Shown one piece after another: positions 1 through 14,379 of a stretch of DNA of 64,000 nt. This stretch comes from Obrimoposthia wandeli. Its lineage: Eukaryota. Positions within the stretch are counted from its first letter, which is position 1. Every line of letters begins with the position of its first letter. A program made the translations under genes and the position numbers. Location of the stretch: contig CDROCS010000666.1 of the NCBI GenBank assembly GCA_977020255.1, forward strand, positions 1-64,000, given 5' to 3'. Under the pieces are notes generated by a model that saw only the letters and a program-made list of their open reading frames with translations, was not told where the DNA came from and did no database searches.

Positions 1-2
1 CG

Positions 3-188
3 CTAAATTTTTACGGTAAAATCCCAAACTTTATCAAATTCTTCTTCAATATGTATTTGATTGACTATATTGCTTTCACTAGGTGGTGCATAGTTCAAAC
101 TTGATGTTGCACAACCGGTTAGAAGTAATGGAACTACCAACATTATTCTTTTTTTAATCATCTCAATTGTCCTTAAATCATCTATCAA
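3..188 (-). CDS. Cassette lipoprotein, partial (runs off the window edge)
   Basis: KKR-hydrophobic-LLTGC lipobox; start just inside the attC at 193. Confidence 0.75.
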   Translation of the reverse strand: MIDDLRTIEMIKKRIMLVVPLLLTGCATSSLNYAPPSESNIVNQIHIEEEFDKVWDFTVKI

Positions 189-192
189 AAAA

Positions 193-297
193 ACCTAACG
201 TCTAACATAAGTTGCACCACGGCTAACTCACCAAGCGCGCTGAACTCCATGCCAAAACTGCGCAGTAAAACGTGTCAACTTGATGTGCTTGTTACAA
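193..297 (-). repeat. attC 1, resident 105-bp family
   Basis: acctaac...gttacaa ends; CAT-C-AAGTTG/CAACTTATG stem with extrahelical base. Confidence 0.95.
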
Positions 298-751
298 CCT
301 ATATAACTCAATAACTTAAAACCAAAATACAGCACAAAACTTTCAACAACAAATCACCCTTTCTCTTTTGCGATTCGCGCAACGCGACTCAATAAGCACA
401 TCGTGAATTTTCACCTAAAGCGACTTAGTAAACACTGAAGCTAAACACAATACAGATGAGAACTTTTGTTGCGGCACGCGAATATTGAAGAATTACTCTG
501 CACACTTGGCAATGAATTTAGACCCACAATATTTGAACCGCAACGGGCGTAATAACTGACACCATCAGTGAAAAATTGCGGCTAAAGAATTTATTGGACA
601 CGATAGAAGCTTGGCAAGAAAGTATTGTATGCGTCAAGCCTTGAACCGTAATAACCGACAAACGAAACTCACTGCAATTCGACTGACAAGAGATTAAAAG
701 AGCAACCACTTGCCGAAGACAAAACCATAAAGATTAAGGCTAAGATGGAGG
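298..751 (-). mobile_element. Gene-less cassette family A, copy A1
   Basis: ~454-bp body repeated 12 times; no conserved ORF; ends gttacaacct/aggttgtaac are complementary. Confidence 0.9.
324..352 (-). promoter_or_regulatory. Candidate sigma70 promoter at the 3' end of family A cassettes (TTGTTG-17-TATTTT), shown for A1
   Basis: Spacing preserved in most copies; -10 is TATTAT in A5 and A7; points to the next cassette. Confidence 0.4.
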
Positions 752-856
752 TTGTAACGTCTAACATAAGTTGCACCACTGCTAACTTACCAAGCACACT
801 GAACCCCATACCAAAACCGCGGAGTAAAACGTGTCAACTTTATGTTTTTGTTATGT
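752..856 (-). repeat. attC 2, resident family
   Basis: ttgtaac...gttatgt. Confidence 0.95.
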
Positions 857-1291
857 TTTATTACCAGATAGGAATCCTATCAGCTCTTCCTCCGCTGGTT
901 TCAAGTCTTTAACACCATCTGAAATCAACCAAGCCTCATCGCTAATCCAGATGCAAAAATCTCTGTAAGATGAATCCAAGGCCGTCGAATTAATGTTCAT
1001 TGCGTGCAGTTTATTTACTACGTCAAAGAACTGTATTTCATCTTGTTTATATGAAATGAAAATTTGATAAGTAACTTGTTTAAAGGCTTCATTTTCATCT
1101 TGCTCGCCGAGTGACGACAGAATACTTAGTTGTTCATGAAGCGTATTAGCTAAAGATAATTCAAATAAGATTTCATCAGGATCATCCGAAAACCTAATTT
1201 TATCATCAGCCCATATAACTAGATCATCATACGAAATCATGGCACATAGGGCTTCAAACTCTTTTATTTTGTAATCCAATAAAGCCGACAT
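851..1291 (-). CDS. Cassette hypothetical protein (146 aa, acidic, helical)
   Basis: ORF fills the cassette; GGTGG RBS; stop inside R''. Confidence 0.85.
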   Translation of the reverse strand: MSALLDYKIKEFEALCAMISYDDLVIWADDKIRFSDDPDEILFELSLANTLHEQLSILSSLGEQDENEAFKQVTYQIFISYKQDEIQFFDVVNKLHAMNINSTALDSSYRDFCIWISDEAWLISDGVKDLKPAEEELIGFLSGNKT

Positions 1292-1304
1292 AATTCCACC
1301 TAAA

Positions 1305-1409
1305 ACATAACGCCTAACATAAGTTGCACCACGACCAGCTTACCAAGCGCACTGAACTCCATACCAAAACTGCGGAGTAAAACGTGTCAACTTGATGTGC
1401 TTGTTACAA
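1305..1409 (-). repeat. attC 3, resident family
   Basis: acataac...gttacaa. Confidence 0.95.
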
Positions 1410-1862
1410 CCGATATAACTCAATAACTTAGAACTAAAATACAGCGTATAACGTCCAACAACAACTCGCCTTTTCTCTTTTGCGATTCACTTAAAGCACC
1501 CCATAATTACAGAGTCGATTATCACTTAAAGCGACTTAGTAAACGCTGAAGCCAAACACAATACAGATGAGAACTTTTGTTGCGGCACGCGAATATTGAA
1601 GGATGCCTTTGCCTACTTGGCAATGAATTGTGAGCCACAAGATTTAAACCGCAACGGGCGTAATAAATAGCAACATCAGTGAACAATTGCGGCTAAAGAA
1701 CTTATTGAGCACGATAAAAACGTGGCAAGAAAGCCTTGTATGCGCCAAGCCTTGAACCGCAATAACCGACAAACGAAACTCACTGCAATTCAACTGACAA
1801 GAGATTAAAAGAGCAACCACTTGCCGAAGACCAAACCATAAAGATTAGGGCTAAGATGAAGG
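1410..1862 (-). mobile_element. Gene-less cassette A2
   Basis: Homologous to A1 over its full length. Confidence 0.9.
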
Positions 1863-1967
1863 TTGTAACGTCTAACATAAGTTGCACCACGGCTAACTCA
1901 CCAAGCGCACTGAACTCCATACCAAAACTGCGGAGTAAAACGTGTCAACTTGATGTGCTTGTTACAA
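1863..1967 (-). repeat. attC 4, resident family
   Basis: ttgtaac...gttacaa. Confidence 0.95.
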
Positions 1968-2421
1968 CCGATATAACTCAATAACTTAGAACTAAAATAC
2001 AGCGTATAACTTCCAACAACAACTCGCCTTTTCTCTTTTGCGATTCACTCAACGCTACCCCATAATCACAGAGTGAGTTATCACTTAAAGCGACTTAGTA
2101 AACGCTGAAGCCAAACACAATACAGATGAGAACTTTTGTTGCGGCACGCGAAGATTGAAGAATTACCCTGCACACTTGGCAATGAATTGTGAGCCACAAA
2201 ATTTGAACCGCAACGGGCGTAAAAACTCACACCATCAGTGAACAATTGCGGCTAAAGAACTTATTAATCACGATAGAAACTTGGCAAGAAAGTATTGTTT
2301 TCGCCAAGCCTTGAACCGCAATAACCGACAAACGAAACTCACTGCATTTCGACTGACAAGATATTAAAAAAGCGACCACTTGCCGAAGAACAAACCATAA
2401 AGATTAGGGCTAAGATGAAGG
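1968..2421 (-). mobile_element. Gene-less cassette A3
   Basis: Homologous to A1/A2. Confidence 0.9.
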
Positions 2422-2526
2422 TTGTAACGCCAGCCATAAGGTGCGCCACGATGAACCAACAAAGCGCACAAAACTTTATACCAAAACTGCGGAGTAAAAG
2501 GCGTCAATTTGATGGCTTTGTTATGG
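2422..2526 (-). repeat. attC 5, diverged 105-bp variant
   Basis: ttgtaac...gttatgg; same length, altered L boxes. Confidence 0.88.
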
Positions 2527-2553
2527 CGCTTGGACTCAAACGCTATGTGTTGG

Positions 2554-2892
2554 CTACCTCCGTGATAAAAAGTAACCAGCACGTTGTAATTCTTTTATTT
2601 TGACCTTTCCAAGGTAATACATTGCTGGCGCCATGATTGCAAAATAACCAAATAGCACAACAAATAAGGTATACGTTGATTCTTGTATGGCAGGTTGATT
2701 GCTGCTGATGAGATAAAACATAGGGAAAACAACTAGAACAGAAAACACCACGTATAGGATCATACTGATGATAGCTTTAACAGCACCAGAGAATATCTTA
2801 GCAATACCAAGTAACAGATATACATACATCACCGTTGCGATGAAGACTGTGGGTATACCGAGACCAACTAATTTGAGCAACTCAATTTCCAT
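2554..2892 (-). CDS. Cassette membrane protein (112 aa, ~3 TM)
   Basis: Hydrophobic ORF within the cassette; ~175-nt leader. Confidence 0.85.
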   Translation of the reverse strand: MEIELLKLVGLGIPTVFIATVMYVYLLLGIAKIFSGAVKAIISMILYVVFSVLVVFPMFYLISSNQPAIQESTYTLFVVLFGYFAIMAPAMYYLGKVKIKELQRAGYFLSRR

Positions 2893-3066
2893 AAAACACT
2901 TACACCTAAATCCATTATCGCTACTTAGGTTAACCTTGATATCATAATCACAAATTAACTTTCGCTATATATCTATACTACTTGCCACCTAAAGTACGAC
3001 TTTACAAATGGTGCTCAAGTCAGCATTAAAACAACTAGTATGTGCACGATGTACACAAAGTTTGCG

Positions 3067-3165
3067 CCATAACGCCGCATTAAGCGGACAAAAATAGTGG
3101 GTTAAAATGTGTAGCGAAGCGAAACGTAACCCACTGTTTTTGTCCGTTTAAATGCCTTGTTATAC
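3067..3165 (-). repeat. attC 6, foreign type (99 bp, gcgaagcgaa loop)
   Basis: ccataac...gttatac with long perfect stem cggacaaaaa/tttttgtccg. Confidence 0.9.
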
Positions 3166-3228
3166 CCACGAGCACATCAATATAGCCCACAGACTTGCTA
3201 GTACCCGAAATCCAAGCAGTCAATGAAC

Positions 3229-3257
3229 TTGACAATCGCACTTAAGGGGTGCAAAAT
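3229..3257 (+). promoter_or_regulatory. Internal sigma70 promoter of the inverted cassette (TTGACA-17-CAAAAT) with flanking GGGTGC/GTACCC inverted repeat
   Basis: Perfect -35 and 17-bp spacer; AAGGAG RBS at 3275-3280 before ATG 3286. Confidence 0.75.
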
Positions 3258-3285
3258 AAAAAACGTACCCACAAAAGGAGCTAGT

Positions 3286-3771
3286 ATGCCCGAGATTAAA
3301 TTTAGAGTCGATGATGCCATAAAGTCAGAGTTTGATAAAGCTTGCAAATATAAAGGTGAAACAGCAAGCAAAATACTTAGAGATGCAATGTGCAAATATG
3401 TTGCAGATAACAAGCCTGAGTTATTTATTAAGGTTAAGCTTTCTAAACCTGAAGAATATCAGCATGGAGCGTGGTTGGTAACGACCGAACCCCTTCGGGA
3501 CTTAACTAGCTTGAAAGAAAATGATATCCCATTTAAATTTCCCAAACTTAAAGACCGTATATTTGTTGCTGATGCAGAATTTCGAAGCGTATTTAACAAT
3601 GAAAACGGATGTGAATTAGGAGGCCTTTTGCTGAAAGGCAGTTGGACAGGGCATTGTTATAGTAACGGTTGTTCTGAAAATGAAAATCGCACACCAATTT
3701 CTGAAGTTCAGATTAAGCTCGAAACAGAAATAAATAAAGTTCTAGAACATTTCATTGGCAACAAAACTTAA
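3286..3771 (+). CDS. Inverted cassette gene: N-terminal ribbon-helix-helix (CopG/RelB-like) domain fused to an unknown ~120-aa domain
   Basis: MPEIKFRVDDAIKSEFDKACKYKGETASKILRDAM fits the RHH pattern; start reassigned from 3223 to 3286 on RBS/promoter grounds. Confidence 0.8.
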   Translation: MPEIKFRVDDAIKSEFDKACKYKGETASKILRDAMCKYVADNKPELFIKVKLSKPEEYQHGAWLVTTEPLRDLTSLKENDIPFKFPKLKDRIFVADAEFRSVFNNENGCELGGLLLKGSWTGHCYSNGCSENENRTPISEVQIKLETEINKVLEHFIGNKT

Positions 3772-3775
3772 GGGG

Positions 3776-3880
3776 GTATAACGCCAAACATAAGTTGCAC
3801 CACGACTAACTCACCAAGCGCACAAAATTTCATACCAAAATTGCGGAGTAAAAGGTGTCAACTTGATGTTCTTGTTAAAT
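3776..3880 (-). repeat. attC 7, resident family
   Basis: gtataac...gttaaat. Confidence 0.93.
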
Positions 3881-3890
3881 GGTTGATTAC

Positions 3891-4166
3891 TCACTTATTA
3901 CCAGAAGTCACTTTTGCAAAGGGGCAAACGTAGTAACACCCGAGGCCTAATATAGCTGCTAGTGCAATTGCAAAAAACATATGAAAATTAAAACTTAACG
4001 CGACCTGTACAGAGATAACTGTAACAAAGCTTGCTAACACAATTGATATTAAGGATACACGCCAATTTTTATGGCAACTTGGGCACGACTTAGGCCTATT
4101 AGATATAGTAAACATCGCACTAGATAAAGATATTACCTTAGCCTTGCAATGTGGGCACTTGAACAT
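3891..4166 (-). CDS. cxxc_20_cxxc-type zinc-ribbon membrane protein (cassette)
   Basis: CPHC-x20-CPSC followed by two hydrophobic helices. Confidence 0.8.
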   Translation of the reverse strand: MFKCPHCKAKVISLSSAMFTISNRPKSCPSCHKNWRVSLISIVLASFVTVISVQVALSFNFHMFFAIALAAILGLGCYYVCPFAKVTSGNK

Positions 4167-4367
4167 GAATACTCCATTTCATAGATTGAACACAAATTGA
4201 ATTATATCTTATTGAGCTATTTTAGATAAAACCGCTCTGTTCAGCATTTAAGTTGGTTTGGATTCAAAATTAATTTGTCCATTAATACAAAATATAAGTG
4301 TACAATTAAGCTTAAAAAAGTCACTTATGAGTTTCAACTTAAAACCTGAACAGAGCCAGATAAAACC

Positions 4368-4459
4368 ATTTAACGCCCTGTTAAGCTGTAAAAAATAGTT
4401 GGCTATAATCGCGAAGCGATGGCCAACTGTTTTTTATCAGTTTAAACAGCTTGTTATGT
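4368..4459 (-). repeat. attC 8, foreign type (92 bp)
   Basis: atttaac...gttatgt; gcgaagcga loop. Confidence 0.9.
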
Positions 4460-4819
4460 GTTTGCTCGTATTTCAGCAATAATTTGGCTTGTGTCATTTC
4501 CAAGCTGAGCTTGTTGCCATAAATCCTGTAATTCAACTTGATTCTCAAGCACCCAAACCTTTACGGTTTTATCATATTTCTTAGAAAGGCTCCCTACAAG
4601 CCTGTCGCCAGAATTCACACAATATGATGCTACATGTGTATTTTTTCCGTAATCGATGTGCACGTGTGGATTCGAGTGTTGCTTTTCTTGATACATTTTA
4701 ATTTTTAAGTTATCTAGTTTTAGTACCAGTAAAGACATACCAGCATTAGACTGCTGTGAGTACAAATCTATTTCAGCTAAACGTCGCTGCAATTGCTTTA
4801 TTTCAACTTCAATACTCAT
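4454..4819 (-). CDS. DUF4160-like protein (cassette)
   Basis: IKMY..H.NPHVHI motif and ENQVELQDLW C-terminal helix. Confidence 0.7.
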   Translation of the reverse strand: MSIEVEIKQLQRRLAEIDLYSQQSNAGMSLLVLKLDNLKIKMYQEKQHSNPHVHIDYGKNTHVASYCVNSGDRLVGSLSKKYDKTVKVWVLENQVELQDLWQQAQLGNDTSQIIAEIRANT

Positions 4820-4851
4820 ATTAGATAAACACTCTCAATCTTAGGATTAAC

Positions 4852-4956
4852 ACATAACGTCTAACATAAGTTGCACCACGACCAACTCACCAAGCACACC
4901 GAACTTCATACCAAAACTGCGCAGTAAAACGTGTCAACTTGATGTGCTTGTTACAA
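4852..4956 (-). repeat. attC 9, resident family
   Basis: acataac...gttacaa. Confidence 0.95.
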
Positions 4957-5410
4957 CCTATATAACTCAACAACTTAGAACAAAAATACAGCACAAAACT
5001 TTCAACAACAACGCGCCTTTTCCCTTTTGCGATTCACTCAACGGTACTCAATAATCACAGGCTGGATTATCACTTGAAGCGACTTAGTAAACGCTGAAGC
5101 CAAACACAAACCAGATGAAAACCTTTGTTGCGGCACGCGAATATTAAAAACGACCCTACACACTTGGCTATGAATTTAGAGCCGCAAAACTTGAACTGCA
5201 ACGGGCGTAATCACCAACAACATCAGTGAACAATTGCGGCTAAAGAACTTATTAAGCGCGATAGAAATTTGGCAAGAAAGCCTTATATACACCAAGCCAA
5301 AAACCGCAAATAACCGATAAACGAAACTCACTGCATTTCGACTGGAAAGATATTAGAAGTGCTTCCACTTGCCGAAGAACAAACCATAAAAATTATGGCT
5401 AAGATGGAGG
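4957..5410 (-). mobile_element. Gene-less cassette A4
   Basis: Homologous to family A. Confidence 0.9.
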
Positions 5411-5510
5411 TTGTAACGCCGAACATAAGTTGCACCACGGCTAACTCACCATGAAAACCGAACTTCATACCAAAACTGCGGAGTAAAACGTGTCAACTTG
5501 ATGTTTTTAT
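5411..5510 (-). repeat. attC 10, resident family with R'' box deleted
   Basis: Normal until gatgttttt; no GTT box at the expected position. Confidence 0.8.
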
Positions 5511-5539
5511 TGCCATTTCTACGATTATTCGATTCCAGC

Positions 5540-5917
5540 TTAAGTATATGAATCATGTGTTAGCCACATAATTTCCAATGCAAAAACTGGTGACGATAAA
5601 AATAATCCCAGCCAGATACTTTGCTCAAAAATGACCTTAAATGGTTCGTAAGCTGCCCAAAATATATAGGCAAAACAAGTAATTATAAAGATGATGTATT
5701 TCGATTGCAGTTTACTAATTTGATAATTAACCTGTTCTGCAGACCATCGTTCTTTTCTAATGCGTTTCAGCATTTTTAACTTAAATCGGCGACTTACTTT
5801 CTTCAAGATGAATGGCAGATTTTTAACAATCCACGCAAGGACTAGACCAAGTACCAAGAAGAAGACACCAGTAAACCACCAAGATGGGTCACTCAAATTA
5901 TCATAAATTTTCTGCAT
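5540..5917 (-). CDS. Cassette membrane protein (125 aa, 3 TM), possibly truncated at the 3' end
   Basis: Hydrophobic-basic-hydrophobic pattern; stop ~30 nt before a damaged attC. Confidence 0.75.
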   Translation of the reverse strand: MQKIYDNLSDPSWWFTGVFFLVLGLVLAWIVKNLPFILKKVSRRFKLKMLKRIRKERWSAEQVNYQISKLQSKYIIFIITCFAYIFWAAYEPFKVIFEQSIWLGLFLSSPVFALEIMWLTHDSYT

Positions 5918-5930
5918 GCTTACCTTTTAT

Positions 5931-6053
5931 GTATAACGCCTAAGCACATGCGCCCGTTATTCACAGGTGTAAAAGTTGAATACCGTAAACACCAAAGCCA
6001 ATTCAAACCAAAACTGCCGAGTGTAACGGGTCGCATGGTGCTTTTTGTTATGT
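5931..6053 (-). repeat. attC 11, foreign Vibrio-like type (123 bp)
   Basis: gtataac...gttatgt; long A/C-rich variable terminal structure. Confidence 0.9.
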
Positions 6054-6056
6054 GCT

Positions 6057-6236
6057 CTACTTACAATATTTGATGATATTTTTCACGTTACTAATTAGTA
6101 ATAGCACACAAAGACCTACTAACACCATTGTATCAAGCCCTCCATCATCATCGGTATACCATGCTAAAACTAAACCTAATAAAAGAGCGAGAACGTCAGC
6201 TAAGACTAACTTTTGTTGCAACCTATTTAAATTCAT
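6057..6236 (-). CDS. Small 2-TM protein, second gene of a bicistronic cassette
   Basis: Two hydrophobic helices around a DDDGG loop; start overlaps the upstream stop; stop next to R''. Confidence 0.7.
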   Translation of the reverse strand: MNLNRLQQKLVLADVLALLLGLVLAWYTDDDGGLDTMVLVGLCVLLLISNVKNIIKYCK

Positions 6237-6765
6237 AATCACTAGTCTTCTGTCTACGTTTCAACTCATTGTTAGTATCTTTTTTCATTATTTCATTAGC
6301 TGATAATATTACGGACAATAAAATCGCATATGGCTTTGAATTCTTGAGATTTTTAAAGTTTTTAACTAAATCCTGAGCTGTTTTAACACCCGCCAAACCA
6401 AATAGCTTAGTGATGACTTCATGTTCCTTTAATTTTTCATTTAACTCATTAGTAGTTAACGACCATAGCCCCCAATTCTTGTTGACTAATGTTACTGTTA
6501 CAGCTTCACCTCTCAGGTATACAGCTAATTTTTTATTTGGATGCTCTAGATACATCCTTAATGTTTGATTTCTACCTAATCGATCTAGGTGTGGATACAA
6601 TATCGTTGCAACCATGAGCTTAACGTCATCATTATTTGCTGATTTAATATATGATTTAGGAACTGAAAGAATTTTAGCAAAATATTCAGCTTGTTTTGTA
6701 ACATCTGTTGGGACCTTGTAAGGCATCCACTCATAGTTGTTTATTTGAGCAATTAATGGATTCAT
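6223..6765 (-). CDS. Basic hypothetical protein (180 aa), first gene of a bicistronic cassette
   Basis: ATG 6765 with AAGGG RBS (track start 6828 extends into the leader). Confidence 0.8.
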   Translation of the reverse strand: MNPLIAQINNYEWMPYKVPTDVTKQAEYFAKILSVPKSYIKSANNDDVKLMVATILYPHLDRLGRNQTLRMYLEHPNKKLAVYLRGEAVTVTLVNKNWGLWSLTTNELNEKLKEHEVITKLFGLAGVKTAQDLVKNFKNLKNSKPYAILLSVILSANEIMKKDTNNELKRRQKTSDYEFK

Positions 6766-6790
6766 GAATAATACCCTTATCTGTAAATAT

Positions 6791-6825
6791 GGATAATTAT
6801 CCAAACCTTGGATTAGCATGCACAA
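6791..6825 (-). promoter_or_regulatory. Candidate internal promoter TTGTGC-18-GATAAT overlapped by the palindrome GGATAATTATCC
   Basis: Perfect 12-bp palindrome at 6791-6802 on the -10 box. Confidence 0.4.
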
Positions 6826-6925
6826 CAATGATTCGACTTAACTATCATAGTTGCGATGAGTATCATGCAGTAGTAACAATAACATGCATGTTCACACAGT
6901 TTTTTGGGATGATTAACAATCAAGC

Positions 6926-7032
6926 ACATAACGCCGCCATAACACGTGCTGACGACTCACTTTCCAAACCAATTATACTCTAAACCAAAAACGCCGAATG
7001 TTATAAGCATCGTGTTGATGGCTTTGTTATGT
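6926..7032 (-). repeat. attC 12, foreign type (107 bp)
   Basis: acataac...gttatgt. Confidence 0.88.
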
Positions 7033-7488
7033 GCGCTGTTGAACATTAAGTACCATTGGAACATAACGAATACCGTTTAAGCTTAACTCTTCTGATACAG
7101 GCTTAAATCCTACTTTTTTATAGAAACCAAGCGCATAAATCGAAGCTTTAACGCTAATTAATTTTGCACCACTTACCGCCTTCATTTGTTCAACTAAACC
7201 CTTAGCTACACCAAAACCGTGATATTCAGTTTTAACGTAAAGATGACCAATATAACTTTCGTCACGCCAAGCTATATAACCGATAATTTCGTTATCAATA
7301 GTGGCTTTAATCGCTGAATAAATACTGGCATCCTTTACCTTGTCGATATCAGATTTAAACGCCATTTTGATAGCTTTTTGACCTTCAGAATTAAGAAGAG
7401 GTACAACATGCTTATCATTAACAGCTTCACCTAATTTAAGAATTACATCTAAATCTTGATGAGTCACTTTTTCATACGAAAATTCCAT
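7027..7488 (-). CDS. GNAT family N-acetyltransferase (cassette)
   Basis: LYVKTEYHGFGVAKGL motif A, ASIYALGFYKKVGF; AGGAG RBS before ATG 7488. Confidence 0.92.
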   Translation of the reverse strand: MEFSYEKVTHQDLDVILKLGEAVNDKHVVPLLNSEGQKAIKMAFKSDIDKVKDASIYSAIKATIDNEIIGYIAWRDESYIGHLYVKTEYHGFGVAKGLVEQMKAVSGAKLISVKASIYALGFYKKVGFKPVSEELSLNGIRYVPMVLNVQQRT

Positions 7489-7501
7489 TTTTACTCCTAG
7501 C

Positions 7502-7626
7502 ACATAACGCCTGCATAACACGTTTGCTACCATGCAGATTAAGCCCAAATTTACCACTTAATACTGCAAACCAAAAGAAACCCAGAATGCCGAATGTAGC
7601 AAATCGTGTTGATGCAATTGTTAGCT
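7502..7626 (-). repeat. attC 13, foreign Vibrio-like type (125 bp)
   Basis: acataac...gttagct. Confidence 0.9.
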
Positions 7627-8223
7627 GCGCCTTTCCAGTTTGAATAACAAACTAGCTTTTGCTGCCAACCATTCACTATTAATTATCGAAAATACAACGG
7701 TATCTCGATAGCTACCATCTGCCATTTGTTGGTGATTTCTAATTACACCGTCCTGCTTTGCACCCAAACGAGCGATTGCATTACGTGAGGCGTGATTATG
7801 CCAATGAGTTCTAAACTCAACTGCGATTGCTGAGAGGTTTTCAAATGCATGAGAAAGAAGAAGGAACTTACATTCGGTATTTACTGATGTTCTCTGATAG
7901 CTTTTCGCATACCACGTATAACCGATTTCTACCCGTTTATTCACACAATCAGCGTGGCATAAGCGAGTTGTACCGATTATCGTTTGAGTTTCATTATCAA
8001 TGACAGAAAAAGCCAAAGAACGCCCAGCGTCTTGTTCGCTTAAAGCCAGTTCAATATAACCGTTTACAGTCTCTTCATTTGGTATTTTTGTATACCATAA
8101 GTCCCAAAGTTCACCATCAGAAGCAGCTTCAACAAGAGCTGACGCATGCTCTAGTTGTAGTGGGATCAATGTGACTATTTTCCCTTTAAGCTCCGTACCT
8201 GAGAGCCATTTCTCACCTTGCAT
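7621..8223 (-). CDS. RimJ/RimL-type GNAT N-acetyltransferase (cassette)
   Basis: EIGYTWYAKSYQRT, NHASRNAIARLGAKQDG; true start after the attC at 8245. Confidence 0.93.
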   Translation of the reverse strand: MQGEKWLSGTELKGKIVTLIPLQLEHASALVEAASDGELWDLWYTKIPNEETVNGYIELALSEQDAGRSLAFSVIDNETQTIIGTTRLCHADCVNKRVEIGYTWYAKSYQRTSVNTECKFLLLSHAFENLSAIAVEFRTHWHNHASRNAIARLGAKQDGVIRNHQQMADGSYRDTVVFSIINSEWLAAKASLLFKLERRS

Positions 8224-8244
8224 ACTAAATTCCTTCTTTGAAGC

Positions 8245-8336
8245 AGCTAACGCCTTAATAAGCGGATAAAAATGGTTGGTTAAAATCGCGAAGCGATGAC
8301 CAACTGTTTTTATTCCGTTTAATTTACTTGTTAGGT
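8245..8336 (-). repeat. attC 14, foreign type (92 bp, same family as attC 8)
   Basis: agctaac...gttaggt; taaaatcgcgaagcgatg loop. Confidence 0.9.
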
Positions 8337-8648
8337 TTAAGCCCACAACAGCGGGCGTAAACCTATTAATTTTTGTTAATTCTAGTAACCCGCTGACTGA
8401 CGAATTTGCTATAAAAACTGAACAAATCAGTTATTGAGTAACTAGCTAATACTTTGAATTTTAAAGTTAAACGCTGAACTAAGCTACAACATAAAATTGA
8501 TTTAGACATAACTTGTGAATCAATGCAGAAATTGGATTATAAAACTCAGTTAACCATTTCATAAAATAGCGTTTCACGCTAATGCGATGGAAAAATCACT
8601 GTTCAATTAAACGAAAAACCACCATTAAAATTGCAGATTCTCAAGTAA
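8337..8648 (-). mobile_element. Gene-less cassette B (312-bp AT-rich body, unrelated to family A)
   Basis: Bounded by matching gttaggt/acctaac; only ORFs under 50 codons without a clear RBS. Confidence 0.75.
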
Positions 8649-8753
8649 ACCTAACGTCTAACATAAGTTGCACCACGGCTAACTCACCAAGCGCACAAAA
8701 CTTCATACCAAAACTGCGGAGTAAAACGTGTCAACTTGATGTTCTTGTTATAA
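8649..8753 (-). repeat. attC 15, resident family
   Basis: acctaac...gttataa. Confidence 0.95.
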
Positions 8754-9203
8754 CCGATACAATTCAATTACTTAAAATTATAATACAGCGAAAGACCCTC
8801 AACAACAGCTCGCCTTTACTCTTTTGCGATTCACTCAACGGTACTCATGACGAGTTGCTTAATTATCACTTGAAGCGATTTAGTAAACGCTGAAATCAGA
8901 CAAGAACCAGATGATGATTTTTGTTGCGGAACGCGAATATTGAAGAATTACCCTGCACACTTGGCAATGAATTTAGAGCAAAAAAACTTGAACCGCAACG
9001 GCACAAAGCTGACACCATCAGTGAATAATTGCGGCCAAAAAACTTATTGAGCACGATGGGTAATTGGCAAGAAAGCCTTATATACACCAAGCCTAAAACC
9101 GCAATAACCGACAAATGAAACTCACTGCATTTCGACTGACAAGAGATTAAAAGAGCGACCACTTGCCGAAGACCAAACCATAAAGATAATGGCAAGATGA
9201 CGG
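8754..9203 (-). mobile_element. Gene-less cassette A5 (divergent; compensatory R-box changes)
   Basis: Ends gttataaccg/cggttataac. Confidence 0.9.
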
Positions 9204-9308
9204 TTATAACGTCTAACATAAGTTGCACCACGGCTAACTCACCAAGCACACTAAACTTCATACCAAAACTGCGCAGTAAAACGTGTCAACTTGATGTGCT
9301 TGTTACAA
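9204..9308 (-). repeat. attC 16, resident family
   Basis: ttataac...gttacaa. Confidence 0.95.
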
Positions 9309-9762
9309 CCTATATAACTCAATAACTTAGAACTAAAATACAGCACAACATTTTCAACAACAAATCGCCTTTTCTTTTTTGCGATTCACTCAACAGCACC
9401 CCATAATCACAGAGTGAATTATCACTTAAAGCGACTTAGTAAACGCTGAAGCCAAACACAATACAGATGAGAGCTTTTGTTGCGGCACGCGAATATTGAA
9501 AAACTACCCTGCCCACTTAGCAATGAATTTAGAGCCACAAAACTTGAACCGCAACGGGCGCGATAACCAACAACATCAGTGAAAAATTGCGGCTAAAGAA
9601 CTTATTAATCACGATAGAAACTTGGCAAGAAAGCCTTATATACACCAAGCCCTAAACCGCAATAACCGACAAACGAAACTCACTGCATTTCAACTGAAAA
9701 GAGATTAAAAGAGCGACCACTTGCCGAAGACCAAACCATAAGGATTAGGGCTAAGATGAAGG
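9309..9762 (-). mobile_element. Gene-less cassette A6
   Basis: Central part nearly identical to A9. Confidence 0.9.
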
Positions 9763-9867
9763 TTGTAACGTCTAACATAAGTTGCACCACGGCCAACCCA
9801 CCAAGCACACCGAACTTCATACCAAAACTGCGGAGTAAAACGTGTCAACTTGATGTTATTGTTACAA
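9763..9867 (-). repeat. attC 17, resident family
   Basis: ttgtaac...gttacaa. Confidence 0.95.
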
Positions 9868-10321
9868 CCGATATAATTCAATAACTTAAACCCATAATAC
9901 AGCGTATAACTTTCAACAACAGCTCGCATTTTCTCTTTTGCGATTCACTCAACACGACTCAATAATCACATCGTGGATTTTCACCTAAAGCGACTTAGTA
10001 AACGCTGAAGCCAAATGCAACACAGATGAGGACTTTTGTTGCGGCACGCGATGATTGAAGAATTACCCTGCCTATTTGGCAATGAATTTTGAGCCACAAA
10101 ATTTGAACCGCAACGGGCGTAATAACTCACACCATCAGTGAAAAATTGCGGCTAAAGAACTTATTGAGCACGGTGGGTAATTGGCAAGAAAGCCTTATAT
10201 ACACCAAGCCTTAAACCGCAATAACCGACAAACGAAACTCACTGCATTTCGACTGAAAAGATATTAAAAAAGTGACCACTTGCCGAAGAACAAACCATAA
10301 AGATTAGGGCTAAGATGAAGG
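9868..10321 (-). mobile_element. Gene-less cassette A7
   Basis: Homologous to family A. Confidence 0.9.
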
Positions 10322-10426
10322 TTGTAACGTCTAACATAAGTTGCACCACGGCTAACTTACCAAGCGCACTGAACTCCATACCAAAACTGCGGAGTAAAAC
10401 GTGTCAACTTGATGTGCTTGTTACAA
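10322..10426 (-). repeat. attC 18, resident family
   Basis: ttgtaac...gttacaa. Confidence 0.95.
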
Positions 10427-10880
10427 CCTATATAACTCAATAACTTAAAACCAAAATACAGCGCAAAACTTTCAACAACTCGCATTTTCTCTTTTGCGAT
10501 TCACTCAACACGACGCAATAATCACATCGTGGATTTTCACCTAAAGCGACTTAGTAAACGCTGAAGCTAAACATATTTCAGATGAGAACTTTTATTGCGG
10601 CACGCGAAGATTGAAGAATTACCCTGTCTATTTGGCAATTAATTTAGAACCACAAGATTCAAACCTGGCGGGCATGCCAGCAGCAACACCATCAATGAAC
10701 CAGTAGGCTAAAGGAAACGTAAGTGACGCGATAGATGCTTGGCAAGAAAGTATTGTTTCCGCTAAGCCTTGAACCGCAATAACCGATAAACAAAGCTCAC
10801 TGCATTTCGACTGACAATATATTAAAGAAGCGACCACTTGCCGAAGAACAAAACCATAATGATTTGGGTTAAGATGAAGG
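10427..10880 (-). mobile_element. Gene-less cassette A8 (carries a strongly diverged ~90-bp central patch)
   Basis: 10650-10740 differs from all other copies; total length unchanged. Confidence 0.9.
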
Positions 10881-10986
10881 TTGTAACGTCTAACATAAGT
10901 TGCACCACGGCTAACTCACCAAGCACACTAAACTTCATACCAAAACTGCGCAGTAGGCAATGTCCAGCTTGATGTGCTTGTTACAA
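10881..10986 (-). repeat. attC 19, resident family variant
   Basis: ttgtaac...gttacaa; cagtaggcaatgtccagcttg variant stem. Confidence 0.9.
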
Positions 10987-11440
10987 CCGATATAACTCAA
11001 TAACTTAGAGCTAAAATACAGCGCATAGCTATCAACAACAACTCGCCTTTTCTCTTTTGCGATTCACTCAACAGCACCCCATAATCACAGGGTGAATTAT
11101 CACTTAAAGCGACTTAGTAAACGCTGAAGCCAAACACAATACAGATGAGAGCTTTTGTTGCGGCACGCGAATATTGAAAAACTACCCTGCCCACTTAGCA
11201 ATGAATTTAGAGCCACAAAACTTGAACCGCAACGGGCGCGATAACCAACAACATCAGTGAAAAATTGCGGCTAAAGAACTTATTAATCACGATAGAAACT
11301 TGGCAAGAAAGCCTTATATACACCAAGCCCTAAACCGCAATAACCGACAAACGAAACTCACCGCACTTCAACTGAAAAGAGATTAAAAGAGCGACCACTT
11401 GCCGAAGAACAAACCATAAAGATTGGGGCTAAGATGAAGG
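10987..11440 (-). mobile_element. Gene-less cassette A9
   Basis: Shares its middle ~250 bp with A6. Confidence 0.9.
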
Positions 11441-11546
11441 TTGTAACGTCTAACATAAGTTGCACCACGGCTAACTCACCAAGCGCACTGAACTCCAGAC
11501 CAAAACTGCGGAGTAAAACGTGTCAACTTGATGTGCCCATTTACAA
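11441..11546 (-). repeat. attC 20, resident family with degenerate R'' (gtgcccatttaca)
   Basis: Invariant AAC of R'' lost. Confidence 0.8.
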
Positions 11547-11981
11547 CCAGTCTCAACTCTTAACTTTGAAGAACTAAATACAAACTTTCAGCAACAAATC
11601 ACCCTTTCTCTTTGCGATTCGCGCAACGCGACTCATCGCTTACATCGTGAATTTTCACCTAAAAGCGACAGCAAACACTGAAGCTAAACACAATACAGAT
11701 GAAATTTTTGTTTGCGGCACGCGAATATTGAAGAGTACTCGCAGCAATGAATTTAGACCCACAATATTTGAACACAACGGGCGTAATAACTGACACCATC
11801 AGTGAAAAAGTACGCTAAGGAATTTATTGGACACGATAGAAGCTTGGCAAAATGACCCAGCCGTCAAGCCTTGAACATAACAACCGACAAGCGAAACTCA
11901 CTTGCAATTCGACTGACAAGAGATTAAAGAGCAACACTTTTACCGAAGACAAAACCATAAAGATTAAGGCTAAGATGGAGG
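11547..11981 (-). mobile_element. Gene-less cassette A10 (A1-like, many small indels)
   Basis: Shares diagnostic gcgcaacgcgactc, gaatttagaccc and gattaaggctaagatggagg with A1. Confidence 0.85.
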
Positions 11982-12086
11982 TTGTAACGTCTAACATAAG
12001 TTGCACCACGACCAACTCACCAAGCGCACTGAACTCCATACCAAAACTGCGGAGTAAAACGTGTCAACTTGATGTTTTTGTTATAT
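11982..12086 (-). repeat. attC 21, resident family
   Basis: ttgtaac...gttatat. Confidence 0.95.
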
Positions 12087-12560
12087 TTTTATTGCAATAA
12101 AACTTGGGACATCAATTTTATCCTTGCCCTTGCTGAAATGATCATCAAATGCATAGGCTATTTTTTCCAATGGTGCCTCGTCATAACCTAAACTTTGAAC
12201 TTCATTAATATACCTTTGCAGAAAGGAAACAGCCCCAAGATGCTGCCATTGGGCAACATGAACAAGTTCATGAAATGTGAACCAATGAAATTTTCAGCTA
12301 AACTTACACGGAAGAATATAGTAAGTATTTTTATATGTAATTCCTTGAACGTCCATATCAAGAAAGCCACCTAAACCGACATCACGCAATTCAGGAAAAT
12401 CAGGTTTAGGGATTGTATCTACTACGACAAAATACGCATTATTTAGAAACTTAACTGAGTAAAAACCTTGGAAGCTTTCAGCAAATTGAGCACAGCTTTG
12501 ACGTTTGTGTGCAAATTTATCATTTGTTACATCAATCCATTCTTCAATTTTATTTAACAT
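12081..12560 (-). pseudogene. Frameshifted copy of the HExxH/DUF4157-like cassette gene
   Basis: Nearly identical to 13228-13701 with indels around 12270-12310; may be a sequencing artefact. Confidence 0.8.
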
Positions 12561-12575
12561 ACTTAAACTCCCAAA

Positions 12576-12681
12576 ATATAACGTCTAACATAAGTTGCAC
12601 CACGGCTAACTCACCAAGCGCACCGAACTTCATACCAAAACTGCGGAGTAAAACGTGTCAACTTGATGTGCCCATTTACAG
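12576..12681 (-). repeat. attC 22, resident family with degenerate R'' (gtgcccatttaca)
   Basis: Same lesion as attC 20. Confidence 0.8.
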
Positions 12682-13128
12682 CGATATAACTCAATAGCAG
12701 AACTAAAAATACATAACTTCCAACAACAACTCGCCTTTTCTCTTTTGCGATTCACTCAACGCTACCAGATAATCACAAAATCGATTACCACTTAAAGCGA
12801 CTTAGTAAACACTGAAGCCAAACACAATACAGATGAGAACTTTTGTTGCGGCACGCGAATATTGAAGTATGACCCTGCCTATTTGGCAATGAATTTAGAG
12901 CCACAATATTTGAACCGCAACGGGCGTAATAACTCACACCATCAGTGAACAATTGCGGCTAAAGAACTTATTGAACACGGTGGGTAATTGGCAAGAAAGA
13001 CTTGTATATGCCAAGCCTAAAACCGCAATAACCGGCAAACGAAAATCACTGCATTTCAACTGACAAGATATTAAAGAAGCGACCACTTGCCGAAGACCAA
13101 ACCATAAAGATTAGGGTTAAGATGAAGG
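12682..13128 (-). mobile_element. Gene-less cassette A11
   Basis: Left part nearly identical to A12, right part different. Confidence 0.88.
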
Positions 13129-13233
13129 TTGTAACGTCTAACATAAGTTGCACCACGACCAACTCACCAAGCGCACTGAACTCCATACCAAAACTGCGGA
13201 GTAAAACGTGTCAACTTGATGTTTTTGTTATAT
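13129..13233 (-). repeat. attC 23, resident family
   Basis: ttgtaac...gttatat. Confidence 0.95.
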
Positions 13234-13701
13234 TTTTATTGCGATAAAACTTGGAACATCAATTTTATCCTTACCCTTGCTGAAATGATCATCAAATGCA
13301 TAGGCTATTTTTTCCAATGGTGCCTCGTCATAACCCAAACTTTGAACTTCATTAATATACCTTTGCAGAAAGGAAACAGCCCCAAGATGCTGCCATTGGG
13401 CAACATGAACAAGTTCATGGAAATGTAGTCGTAAATTTTCAGCTAAACACGGAAGAATATAGTAAGTATTTTTATATGTAATTCCTTGAACGTCCATATC
13501 AAGAAAGCCACCTAAACCGACATCACGCAACTCAGGAAAATCAGGTTTAGGGATTGTATCTACTACGACAAAATACGCATTATTTAGAAACTCAACTGAG
13601 TAAAAACCTTGGAAGCTTTCAGCAAATTGAGCACAGCTTTGACGTTTGTGTGCAAATTTATCATTTGTTGCATCAATCCATTCTTCAATTTTATTTAACA
13701 T
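13228..13701 (-). CDS. Zincin-like HExxH protein, DUF4157/eCIS-core-like (cassette)
   Basis: GITY..TYYI, HFHELVHVAQW, PLE..AY. Confidence 0.75.
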   Translation of the reverse strand: MLNKIEEWIDATNDKFAHKRQSCAQFAESFQGFYSVEFLNNAYFVVVDTIPKPDFPELRDVGLGGFLDMDVQGITYKNTYYILPCLAENLRLHFHELVHVAQWQHLGAVSFLQRYINEVQSLGYDEAPLEKIAYAFDDHFSKGKDKIDVPSFIAIKI

Positions 13702-13717
13702 ACTTTAACACCCAAAA

Positions 13718-13822
13718 ATATAACGTCTAACATAAGTTGCACCACGACTAACTTACCAAGCGCACTGAACTCCATACCAAAACCGCGGAGTAAAACGTGT
13801 CAACTTGATGTGCTTGTTACAA
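13718..13822 (-). repeat. attC 24, resident family
   Basis: atataac...gttacaa. Confidence 0.95.
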
Positions 13823-14274
13823 CCGATATAACTCAATAACTTAGAACTAAAATACAGCGTATAACTTCCAACAACAACTCGCCTTTTCTCTTTTGCGATT
13901 CACTCAACGCTACCAGATAATCACAAAATCGATTACCACTTAAAGCGACTTAGTAAACGCAGAAGCCAAACACTATACAGATGAGAACTTTTGTTGCGGC
14001 ACGCGAAAATTGAAGTATTACCCTGCACACTTGGCAATGAATTTTGAGCCACAAAACTTGAACCGCAACGGGCGTAAACTCACACCATCAGTGAAAAATT
14101 GCGGCTAAAGAACTTATTAATCACGATAGAAGCTTGGTATGAAATATGGTTTCCGCCAAGCCTTGAACCGCAATAACCGTTAAACGAAACTCACTGCATT
14201 TCTACTGACAAGAAATTAAAAGAGCGACCACTTGCCGAAGAACAAACCATAAAGATTATGGGCTAAGATGAAGG
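13823..14274 (-). mobile_element. Gene-less cassette A12 (closest family A copy to attI)
   Basis: Homologous to family A. Confidence 0.9.
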
Positions 14275-14379
14275 TTGTAACGTCTAACATAAGTTGCGCC
14301 ACGGCTAACTCACCAATCACACTAAACTCCATACCAAAACTGCGGAGTAAAACGTGTCAACTTGATGTTTTTGTTATAT
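14275..14379 (-). repeat. attC 25, resident family
   Basis: ttgtaac...gttatat. Confidence 0.95.

What the first reader, a model, noticed from the sequence alone, without database searches (positions are those of the whole stretch)
193..14281. One gene-less cassette family makes up 12 of 27 cassettes and keeps a near-fixed 559-bp length
Seen: crossover-to-crossover lengths of A1-A12 are 559, 558, 559, 559, 555, 559, 559, 559, 560, 541, 553 and 557 bp. The copies carry many substitutions but almost no net indels outside the error-prone A10/A11. A8 has -3, +2 and +1 indels that sum to zero. No reading frame is intact across copies, and the top strand is strongly G/T-rich like the attC loop. Known: gene-less cassettes occur in Vibrionaceae superintegrons, some have promoter activity, and their function is largely unresolved. 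Inference: this amplification with length constraint points to a selected non-coding element (structured RNA, promoter/spacer module or recombination substrate) propagated by IntI. It is the best candidate here for an undescribed system.
Basis: partly seen in the sequence, partly recalled or inferred. Interest (0 to 1): 0.85.

Follow-up and report, generated by a model that had tools for sequence, protein, structure and literature searches.

The report
Old non-coding integron cassette family
Twelve of about 27 units in this bacterial gene-capture array are diverged copies of one gene-less 559-bp unit, which is conserved in deep-sea Photobacterium; it belongs to an already described kind, is not a folded RNA, and its role is unproven, most plausibly a switch for neighbouring genes.

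Summary
They lie on the minus strand next to a true integron integrase.

The family has no conserved reading frame, no codon periodicity and no Pfam or Rfam match.

It is not a recent local amplification. Window copies are 76-96% identical. They interleave on a tree with copies from Photobacterium profundum SS9, P. frigidiphilum and metagenome contigs.

Across 40 copies, 119 of 447 body columns never change (28.5 expected under a uniform rate) and 53 are hypervariable (3.3 expected). Parts of the body are therefore under purifying selection.

A structured RNA is not supported: SCI is about 0.3 on both strands, and compensatory changes occur only in attC.

Length is not strictly fixed. Classes of about 559, 528 and 450 bp recur through deletions between short direct repeats.

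Promoter-like elements sit on conserved islands: sense TTGCCA-N17-TTCAAT and antisense TTGCGA-N17-NATAAT. I found no usable transcript evidence.

Highly paralogous non-coding cassette families (Boucher 2006) and promoter cassettes (Blanco 2024) are already described in Vibrionaceae. This is a new member of a known kind whose function is unproven.

The parts
199..757 (-). Family copy A1 (559 bp), crossover to crossover
1311..1868 (-). Family copy A2 (558 bp)
1869..2427 (-). Family copy A3 (559 bp). It is the reference for the family coordinates used in this report: sense position p equals window position 2427-p+1
4858..5416 (-). Family copy A4 (559 bp)
8655..9209 (-). Family copy A5 (555 bp). 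Its sub-lineage is shared with P. profundum SS9 copies and metagenome copy M20a
9210..11446 (-). Four tandem copies: A6 9210-9768, A7 9769-10327, A8 10328-10886, A9 10887-11446. A6 and A9 are 96.6% identical; the other pairs are 82-89% identical over the whole cassette
11447..11987 (-). Copy A10 (541 bp), degenerate. It has many indels and its attC R'' box is altered (TAAC becomes TAAAT)
12582..13134 (-). Copy A11 (553 bp), with the same altered R'' box as A10
13724..14280 (-). Copy A12 (557 bp), 94.3% identical to A3
1859..1976 (+). attC of A3, shown as the bottom strand. A 9-bp R'/R'' stem is followed by an unpaired spacer, a bulged L'/L'' stem and a variable tip. Every copy carries the same attC type in its low-coordinate ~105 nt
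   Evidence: ssDNA fold -16.6 kcal/mol, z -2.45; R'/R'' pair, columns 4/480, changes CG to UA together in 6 copies
2154..2182 (-). Candidate sense promoter in A3: TTGCCA (2182-2177), a 17-nt hypervariable spacer, then TTCAAT (2159-2154). It is present in all length classes
   Evidence: It has the top conservation contrast in the body (99.8th percentile). TTCAAT lacks the usual A at position 2, so the match is only promoter-like
2038..2066 (+). Candidate antisense promoter in A3: TTGCGA (2038-2043), a 17-nt spacer, then CATAAT (2061-2066). It reads toward the upstream cassette
   Evidence: It scores as promoter-like in 22 of the 28 copies scanned. The ATAAT island lies between two hypervariable patches. 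Its conservation contrast is unremarkable (72nd percentile)
2216..2323 (-). Module 1 (sense positions 105-212). It is dispensable: absent from the ~450-bp variants, and partly deleted, including its TTGCCA-N18-TAAGTT, in the ~528-bp variants
16379..17359 (+). intI, the integron integrase, divergent from the cassette array
   Evidence: TIGR02249, 395 bits against a cutoff of 265

Best explanation
This is an old, mobile family of ORF-less integron cassettes confined, as far as I could see, to the Photobacterium profundum group. Each unit is a ~450-nt non-coding body plus a canonical VCR-like attC. IntI moves it like any other cassette.

The array holds many diverged members of the family pool rather than fresh duplicates. 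Discrete islands of the body are kept invariant by selection, while the patches between them have drifted to near saturation.

The most likely function is inferred, not shown: the body is cis-acting regulatory DNA, a 'promoter cassette'. It would start transcription inside the array, either in the sense direction into the downstream cassette (TTGCCA-N17-TTCAAT) or in the antisense direction into the upstream one (TTGCGA-N17-NATAAT).

The identity as a paralogous non-coding cassette family is near certain. The stated confidence applies to the promoter function.
For: - Integron context: intI; a canonical attC fold; unit ends that coincide with the G|TT crossover; R'/R'' co-variation.
- Same family in different neighbourhoods: P. 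frigidiphilum, P. profundum SS9 and metagenome contigs. In L021 one copy sits beside a cassette with another attC type.
- Non-coding.
- Selection: 119 invariant columns against 28.5 expected, 53 hypervariable columns against 3.3 expected, dispersion 3.8.
- Promoter-like hexamers fall on conserved islands separated by hypervariable spacers of 16-18 nt. The sense element ranks first of all windows for this contrast and is retained in all length classes.
- Size (559 bp) and attC length lie within the range of Vibrionaceae gene-less cassettes. Most of those had sense promoter activity and one had antisense activity (PMC11014356).
Against: - No transcript evidence. The one metatranscriptome run holds only a 320-nt low-depth contig without direction, and it could be DNA carry-over.
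- The P. profundum SS9 RNA-seq study lists no sRNA among the coordinates of the family copies I checked.
- TTCAAT lacks the key A at position 2 of a sigma-70 -10 box. The antisense element has the better sequence match but no special conservation contrast.
- Promoter-like matches in the region are not more numerous than in shuffled sequence (8 against 5.1 +/- 1.9).
- About 27% of body columns are invariant (119 of 447), and by my reading of the entropy profile (not counted) well over half vary little. That is far more constraint than one promoter needs, so at least part of the function is unexplained.
- Blanco et al. state that promoters in such cassettes cannot be identified in silico.
Confidence: 0.42

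Rival explanations
1. The family is a selfish cassette. It persists because it is an unusually good IntI substrate. The conserved body islands would serve its own excision, insertion or survival, for example as accessory protein sites or single-strand folding aids, and give the host no benefit.
For: - High share of the arrays in every genome seen: 12 of about 27 cassettes here, at least 10 copies in 20 kb of SS9, and at least 9 copies in two P. frigidiphilum contigs.
- Sub-lineages are shared between genomes.
- The distribution is restricted to one clade that shares one attC type.
- Boucher et al. proposed this option for such families.
- Inverted motifs TTGCGG/CCGCAA and a mild GTT excess (23 against 14.7) occur in the body.
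- Folding z is about -3 on both strands, which fits DNA-level symmetry.
Against: - A purely selfish cassette needs only its attC. Deletion bias should then shrink the body, yet roughly 340 nt outside module 1 are retained in all 40 copies, and 27% of body columns are invariant.
- No known integron mechanism uses sites outside attC (established knowledge).
- Adjacency of copies in the array is not above chance. I count 6 neighbouring pairs against about 4.9 expected; this is my own arithmetic from the cassette order.
Confidence: 0.25
2. The body encodes a functional RNA, either cis-antisense or trans-acting. Its active parts would be the invariant islands, and it would have little or no variable stem structure.
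For: - Strong positional conservation without coding signal.
- The sense strand is G/U-rich.
- The antisense promoter-like element has 9-10 of 12 consensus matches in most copies.
- One family contig appears in a sediment metatranscriptome.
- Invariant pairs such as TTGCGG/CCGCAA can neither support nor refute pairing.
Against: - No Rfam family matches.
- SCI is 0.29-0.32 over the whole body and 0.01-0.55 in 120-nt windows, despite about 87% identity.
- The covariation term is about zero, and no compensatory pairs lie outside attC.
- Hypervariable columns show no excess complementarity.
- No terminator is conserved.
- No sRNA was called at the SS9 copies.
Confidence: 0.15
3. The conserved islands are an array of binding sites for a host or integron protein such as a nucleoid protein or a regulator. 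The cassette would then act as an insulator, a silencer or a structural spacer in the array.
For: - Three motifs recur in the same order in about three ~100-nt modules: TT[GA][CT]GGTT, [TC][TG]GC(C)AAGT and G[CT]CG[CA]AA.
- The islands are short and separated by free sequence of nearly fixed length.
- The complementarity signal is symmetric between strands.
Against: - I recognised no known operator consensus (LexA, CRP, Fur, sigma-54). That check was done from memory only and is not a test.
- Module 1 is dispensable in natural variants.
- Similarity between modules is not significant by local alignment.
Confidence: 0.1
4. The family encodes one or more small peptides, or it is a decayed protein gene.
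For: - Recurrent short open frames: a 56-codon frame is open in many copies, and a 46-aa hydrophobic frame runs in from the upstream attC.
- On the + strand an invariant ATG with a GG-rich stretch 5-8 nt upstream opens a ~42-aa frame across the neighbouring attC.
Against: - No frame is open in all copies, and indels are mostly 1 nt.
- No third-position excess appears in any frame or window.
- There are no Pfam hits.
- Protein searches returned only spurious ORFs called on the same family, or nothing at all.
Confidence: 0.05

Closest known systems
Highly paralogous non-coding cassette families of Vibrio chromosomal integrons (Boucher et al. 2006, PMC1382264; e.g. 45 copies in V. vulnificus CMCP6)
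   Same: Both are ORF-less cassettes that are repeated many times in one array. Both have >80% identical homologues in related species and none outside the group. Both are conserved over their whole length without a synonymous-site pattern. That paper inferred purifying selection and offered the same two hypotheses, selfish element or promoter/RNA.
   Different: This is a different sequence family. None of six conserved 10-12-mers from it occurs in the 30 Vibrio gene-less cassette sequences of Blanco et al.. The body has no match in Vibrio records of the plasmid collection, where only the attC matches. It occurs in Photobacterium. Here the island/hypervariable-patch layout, the ~100-nt modules and the three length classes are documented.
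'Promoter cassettes': gene-less cassettes of Vibrionaceae superintegrons with measured promoter activity (Blanco et al. 2024, PMC11014356)
   Same: Both are gene-less. The 559-bp size falls within their 491-666 bp range, and the ~105-nt attC falls within their 101-127 bp range. Both lie in a sedentary chromosomal integron of the Vibrionaceae. Promoter-like elements occur on both strands, and they found mostly sense activity with one antisense case.
   Different: No activity has been measured for this family. Their cassettes were mostly single and some were decayed genes. This family is multi-copy, is shared across species and shows no trace of a former gene.
Ordinary attC-bounded gene cassettes of the same array
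   Same: They share the same attC type, the same orientation, the same crossover point and the same IntI.
   Different: This family has no gene. Its sense strand is T-rich. It reaches 12 copies in 16 kb.

Membership tests
Integron gene cassette in a sedentary chromosomal integron | An integron integrase (IntI) gene next to the array, in divergent orientation | tested here: met
   Window 16379-17359 (+) matches TIGR02249 integron integrase at 395 bits against a cutoff of 265. The cassette ORFs lie on the minus strand.
Integron gene cassette in a sedentary chromosomal integron | An attC with R''/L''/L'/R' inverted repeats that folds as an imperfect hairpin on the bottom strand | tested here: met
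   The ssDNA fold of 1859-1976 (+) gives a 9-bp R'/R'' stem, a spacer, a bulged L stem and a variable tip. The R'/R'' pair co-varies, CG to UA, in 6 of 40 copies.
Integron gene cassette in a sedentary chromosomal integron | The repeat unit ends exactly at the G|TT crossover, and the same unit occurs in different neighbourhoods | tested here: met
   Similarity stops at the crossover in all 12 copies. Copies sit next to unrelated cassettes in L004, L016-L022, and once beside a different attC type.
Paralogous non-coding cassette family (sensu Boucher 2006) | No conserved ORF, no protein homologue and no synonymous-site substitution pattern | tested here: met
   No frame is open across copies. No 3-periodicity. 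No Pfam hit. Protein searches found only ORFs called on the same family, or nothing. A full six-frame search was not done.
Paralogous non-coding cassette family (sensu Boucher 2006) | Several paralogues in one array, and >80% identical homologues in related species only | tested here: met
   There are 12 copies here at 76-96% identity. Copies from P. frigidiphilum, P. profundum SS9 and metagenomes are 75-96% identical to them. The genome-wide pattern scan hit only Photobacterium, plus 12 matches I judge to be chance (about 8 expected by my estimate; all in unrelated taxa; not inspected). No viral hit. Plasmid hits cover the attC only.
Promoter cassette (sensu Blanco 2024) | Measured promoter activity by reporter, RT-qPCR or 5'-RACE | not testable with these tools
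   Only sequence-level promoter-like elements are available. The one RNA run is an undirected, low-depth metatranscriptome contig.
Promoter cassette (sensu Blanco 2024) | A gene-less cassette of about 0.5-0.7 kb in a Vibrionaceae chromosomal integron | tested here: met
   The cassette is 559 bp with a ~105-nt attC, within the range reported.
Structured non-coding RNA | A match to a curated RNA family | tested here: not met
   No Rfam match at gathering threshold over the whole window. Only noise at E>1 in 1-3000.
Structured non-coding RNA | A conserved secondary structure supported by compensatory changes | tested here: not met
   SCI is 0.29-0.32 on both strands. The RNAalifold covariation term is -1.67 of -37 kcal/mol, and compensatory pairs occur only in attC and R'/R''. 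Complementary covariation among hypervariable columns equals the permuted null. Invariant stems cannot be excluded.
Protein-coding or small-peptide cassette | An ORF kept open across copies, with third-position variation | tested here: not met
   The indels are mostly 1 nt and are not multiples of three.

The most novel reading that the evidence does not exclude
The invariant islands are cis-acting signals that make this cassette regulate the integron itself. One possibility is an antisense-promoter 'silencer' unit that damps Pc-driven expression of the array, which would matter when 12 units sit in the first 27 cassettes. Another is a set of accessory sites that raise the cassette's own excision and re-insertion. 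Either would be a cassette class selected for what it does to the array rather than for a cargo.
Probability: 0.15. Interest if true: 0.7.

Novelty: new member of a known kind. Interest (0 to 1): 0.35.

Why it matters
What the abundant non-coding cassettes of Vibrionaceae superintegrons do has been open since at least 2006.

This family is a convenient test case for four reasons:
- It is multi-copy.
- It is shared by a cultivable model strain (P. profundum SS9), a type strain (P. frigidiphilum) and deep-sea metagenomes.
- Its constraint map is sharp: invariant islands, near-saturated patches between them, and natural deletion variants that already show module 1 to be dispensable.
- That map says exactly which bases to mutate.

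If it proves to be a sense or antisense promoter unit, it extends the 'promoter cassette' idea from single cassettes to a propagating family that can make up about 40% of an array. If not, more than 100 invariant non-coding positions still need a mechanism.

Tried and rejected
- **Rfam.** Nothing in the whole window at gathering threshold or in 1-3000 at E<=5.
- **Structured RNA.** Sliding-window SCI with column shuffles, whole-body RNAalifold on both strands, an all-pairs covariation scan and a hypervariable-column test against permuted rows all gave no structural signal outside attC.
- **Coding.** Stop maps, periodicity, Pfam and two protein-database searches were all negative.
- **SS9 'CRISPR-DR4' cluster.** I suspected that the '27 CRISPR-DR4 elements' transcribed on SS9 chromosome 2 (Campanaro 2012) were this family. 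The supplement shows 28-nt repeats at 60-nt spacing, so it is a real CRISPR array. Idea rejected.
- **SS9 sRNA list.** I searched the tables of that paper for most 1-kb coordinate blocks that hold family copies. No entry lies there.
- **Modules as decayed attC sites or a significant internal duplication.** No local alignment between modules, flanks and attC reaches z>3. Only the shared motif order and the 107-nt deletion between TTGCGGTT repeats support an old duplication.
- **Clustering of copies in the array.** 6 adjacent pairs against about 4.9 expected, which is not significant.
- **Spread beyond the clade.** No viral contig hit. Plasmid-collection hits cover the attC only.
- **Homology to tested Vibrio gene-less cassettes.** None of six conserved 10-12-mers occurs in the Blanco supplement.
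- **Expression data.** Only one RNA run holds any family words. Contigs carry no direction and their ends reflect assembly-graph branching, so I drew no conclusion.

Full report
**Context**

The first ~16 kb of the window is the integrase-proximal end of a chromosomal integron. The ORF at 16379-17359 (+) is an integron integrase: TIGR02249 at 395 bits against a cutoff of 265, with Pfam Phage_integrase plus a SAM-like N-terminal domain. The cassette ORFs run on the minus strand. BLAST with one attC finds 21 copies of a single VCR-like attC type between 196 and 15736.

On the bottom strand, which is the window's + strand here, the attC folds as expected. It has a 9-bp R'/R'' stem, an unpaired spacer, a bulged L stem and a variable tip.

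**The observation**

Aligning the attC ends shows that similarity between neighbouring units stops at the crossover, TAA|C on the + strand. Cutting there gives twelve units of 559, 558, 559, 559, 555, 559, 559, 559, 560, 541, 553 and 557 bp.

A pattern built from two conserved blocks hits all twelve copies, against zero hits in shuffles. The cassette-sense strand is T 37%, G 22%, A 23%, C 18%.

Contigs of run X1 match copy-specific stretches with no differences. The diverged copies are therefore real sequence, although no contig bridges the tandem run.

**Not coding**

- No frame is open in all copies. The most recurrent stop-free stretch is 56 codons and is open in about half of them.
- Column variability shows no 3-base periodicity, either overall or in any 90-nt window.
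- Indels are mostly single bases.
- Six recurrent ORFs have no Pfam match.
- One protein search found only two 'hypothetical proteins', which are themselves ORFs called on this family. The other search found nothing.

**Distribution**

One scan of 185,579 species genomes with a 21-base gapped pattern hit Photobacterium frigidiphilum JCM 12947 and twelve unrelated records. I judge those twelve to be chance matches: about 8 were expected by my own estimate and all lie in unrelated taxa, but I did not inspect them. The two P. frigidiphilum contigs carry at least nine full copies.

A spurious ORF led to PBPRB1704 of P. profundum SS9. The 20 kb around it on chromosome 2 hold at least ten copies, some interrupted by IS elements. 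Six metagenome contigs add eleven more copies.

Cold-seep and sediment metagenomes hold many variants at high depth. Viral contigs have none. In the plasmid collection only the attC part matches other genera.

None of six conserved 10-12-mers occurs among the 30 Vibrio gene-less cassettes tested by Blanco et al.. The family therefore looks specific to the P. profundum group.

**Age and mode of spread**

Window copies are 76-96% identical to each other and equally close to copies from other genomes. In a 40-copy alignment and tree, window copies are scattered over the whole tree.

- The nearest relatives often lie in another genome: A5 with SS9a/SS9h, A11 with M21b, and Pf4a with SS9f at 96.4%.
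- Only A6/A9 (96.6%) and A3/A12 (94.3%) look like recent in-array duplicates.
- Adjacent pairs of family copies number 6, against about 4.9 expected for 12 of 27 placed at random. This is my own count.

The picture is an array that has accumulated many members of an old, circulating family. It is not a local burst.

**Length**

In the wider family, lengths fall into three classes:

| Class | Size | Copies | Origin |
|---|---|---|---|
| Full length | ~555-561 bp, mode 559 | most copies | - |
| Short | ~526-529 bp | 7, from four sources | 30-nt deletion between TTCTT repeats |
| Shortest | ~450 bp | 3 | 107-nt deletion between two TTGCGGTT repeats |

The 30-nt deletion removes one promoter-like element. 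The 107-nt deletion removes one whole module. There are also one-off lengths of 541, 553 and 566 bp.

Both deletions arose more than once on the tree. The body carries very roughly 45-55 indel events against 1226 substitution steps, a ratio of about 0.04. That range is my estimate: the raw counts are 45 gap characters and 79 Fitch events, inflated by overlap with the large deletions. The attC part carries 2 events against 188 steps. Indels are therefore somewhat rare, but length is not fixed. The zero sum of the A8 indels needs no special explanation.

**Selection**

- Parsimony steps per column are strongly over-dispersed, with variance/mean of 3.8.
- 119 of 447 body columns never change in 40 copies, against 28.5 expected under a uniform rate.
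- 53 columns have 8 or more steps, against 3.3 expected.
- Variable columns are clustered, with lag-1 autocorrelation z of 3.9.
- The most conserved islands are as conserved as the functional parts of attC.
- Hypervariable positions reach 1.2-1.5 bits, which is near saturation.

Gene conversion would homogenise whole tracts, not interleaved short islands. Purifying selection on specific positions is the simplest reading.

**Structured RNA**

- No Rfam family matches.
- In 120-nt windows SCI is at most 0.55.
- Over the whole body SCI is 0.32 (sense) and 0.29 (antisense). Both strands give z of about -3 against column shuffles, which fits DNA-level inverted motifs rather than a strand-specific RNA fold.
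- RNAalifold on 40 copies gives -37 kcal/mol with a covariation term of -1.67. Pairs with more than one compensatory change are all in attC, plus the R'/R'' pair that joins the cassette's first bases to its own attC. That pair is expected from integron mechanics.
- Among 98 high-entropy positions, 195 column pairs are at least 85% canonical with two or more Watson-Crick types. Row-permuted controls give 197 +/- 8.

Invariant complementary motifs (TTGCGG/CCGCAA) cannot be tested by covariation. A structure made only of invariant bases is therefore not excluded, but nothing supports it.

**Anatomy of the body** (family coordinates; A3 position p equals window 2427-p+1)

- 1-8: R' remainder.
- 9-104: conserved 5' region with an invariant CATCTT and CTTCGGCAAGTGG.
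- 105-212: module 1.
- 213-300: module 2.
- 300-455: a unique 3' region with invariant blocks TTCAGCGTTTAC and GAATCGCAAAAGAG.
- Then the attC.

Three motifs recur in the same order in the modules, and in degenerate form in the 5' region: TT[GA][CT]GGTT, [TC][TG]GC(C)AAGT and G[CT]CG[CA]AA. Similarity between modules is not significant by local alignment.

**Promoter-like elements**

A position-weight scan of 28 copies finds three elements at fixed alignment positions.

| Element | Sequence | Copies scoring (of 28) | Conservation contrast |
|---|---|---|---|
| Sense, module 2 | TTGCCA-N17-TTCAAT | 23 | 99.8th percentile, highest in the body |
| Sense, module 1 | TTGCCA-N18-TAAGTT | 19 | 95th percentile |
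| Antisense | TTGCGA-N17-NATAAT | 22 | 72nd percentile |

Conservation contrast means hexamers conserved and spacer hypervariable. This measure is independent of the sequence match.

For the module 2 element the spacer length stays within 16-18 nt. The module 1 element is deleted in the ~528-bp and ~450-bp variants, so it is dispensable. For the antisense element, the ATAAT island is flanked by two hypervariable patches.

Weak points:
- TTCAAT lacks the A at position 2 that sigma-70 -10 boxes nearly always have (established knowledge).
- The consensus scanner finds no more promoter-like sites in the region than in shuffles.
- One promoter cannot explain the more than 100 invariant body positions.

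**Expression evidence**

- Only one RNA run holds family words. It is a marine-sediment metatranscriptome with a 320-nt contig at depth ~3, without direction, and possibly DNA carry-over.
- The SS9 RNA-seq paper lists 460 candidate sRNAs, 150 of them in repeated regions. None has coordinates among the family copies I checked.
- My idea that its '27 CRISPR-DR4 elements' were these cassettes was wrong. They are 28-nt repeats at 60-nt spacing.

**Comparison with what is known**

Boucher et al. 2006 (PMC1382264) described exactly this kind of object in Vibrio arrays:
- Non-coding cassettes that are 'highly paralogous', with 45 copies in V. vulnificus CMCP6.
- They are >80% identical between species and absent outside the group.
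- They are conserved over their whole length without a synonymous-site pattern.
- The authors read them as being under purifying selection, and as either selfish or regulatory.

Blanco et al. 2024 (PMC11014356) showed that most of 29 gene-less cassettes of 491-666 bp from four Vibrio species have sense promoter activity and one has antisense activity. They also stated that such promoters cannot be called in silico.

The present family meets every sequence-level criterion of the first class and the size and context criteria of the second. Activity is untested.

**Verdict**

It is a new (Photobacterium) member of a known kind. It is not an undescribed system, and the structured-RNA reading is not supported.

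My best guess for function is a cis-acting promoter unit whose orientation is unresolved. A selfish high-efficiency cassette and an unstructured RNA are the main rivals.

Noticed in passing
L022:4923, L022:14811, L022:16720 (P. profundum SS9 chr2); also L016, reverse-strand position 5586: An IS with a DDE_Tnp_1 transposase begins (CTGGGGAATCCCCACATAATTTACGC...) at exactly the attC crossover point. It does so three times in 20 kb of the SS9 array and once in a metagenome contig. This looks like an attC-targeting insertion sequence.
   Followed up: no
window 11988-12581 and 13135-13723: There are two copies of one cassette, 97-98% identical. One carries an intact 157-aa ORF (13228-13701, minus strand). 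In the other the ORF is cut to 88 aa (12294-12560). Each copy is followed by a family copy, yet those two family copies (A11 and A10) are only 78% identical.
   Followed up: partly
window 11530-11545 (A10) and 12665-12680 (A11): Both attC sites have GCCCATTTACA where the others have GCTTGTTACA. The AAC core of the R'' box is therefore lost, and these two cassettes may no longer be excisable.
   Followed up: no
window 1856-1984 (+) and the equivalent place at the high-coordinate end of every family copy: An invariant ATG in the first 13 bases of the cassette, read on the + strand and preceded by a GG-rich stretch, opens a 41-58-aa frame. The frame runs antisense across the attC of whichever cassette lies upstream. 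It is probably fortuitous, but the ATG is kept in 40 of 40 copies.
   Followed up: partly
window 4364-4459 and 8241-8336: A second attC-like repeat type, 78% identical between its two copies, bounds some cassettes of the same array. The array therefore mixes attC classes. The same mixing is seen in L021, where a family copy follows a cassette with an unrelated attC.
   Followed up: no
window 3223-3771 (+): A 182-aa ORF lies in the opposite orientation to the rest of the array. It has a weak RelB-antitoxin (ribbon-helix-helix) N-terminal match (E 5e-4, below the Pfam cutoff).
   Followed up: no
window 8500-14400: Cold-seep, sediment and ice metagenome runs hold many variants of the family at summed word depths of hundreds. 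The hosts of the family therefore appear common in cold marine sediments.
   Followed up: partly
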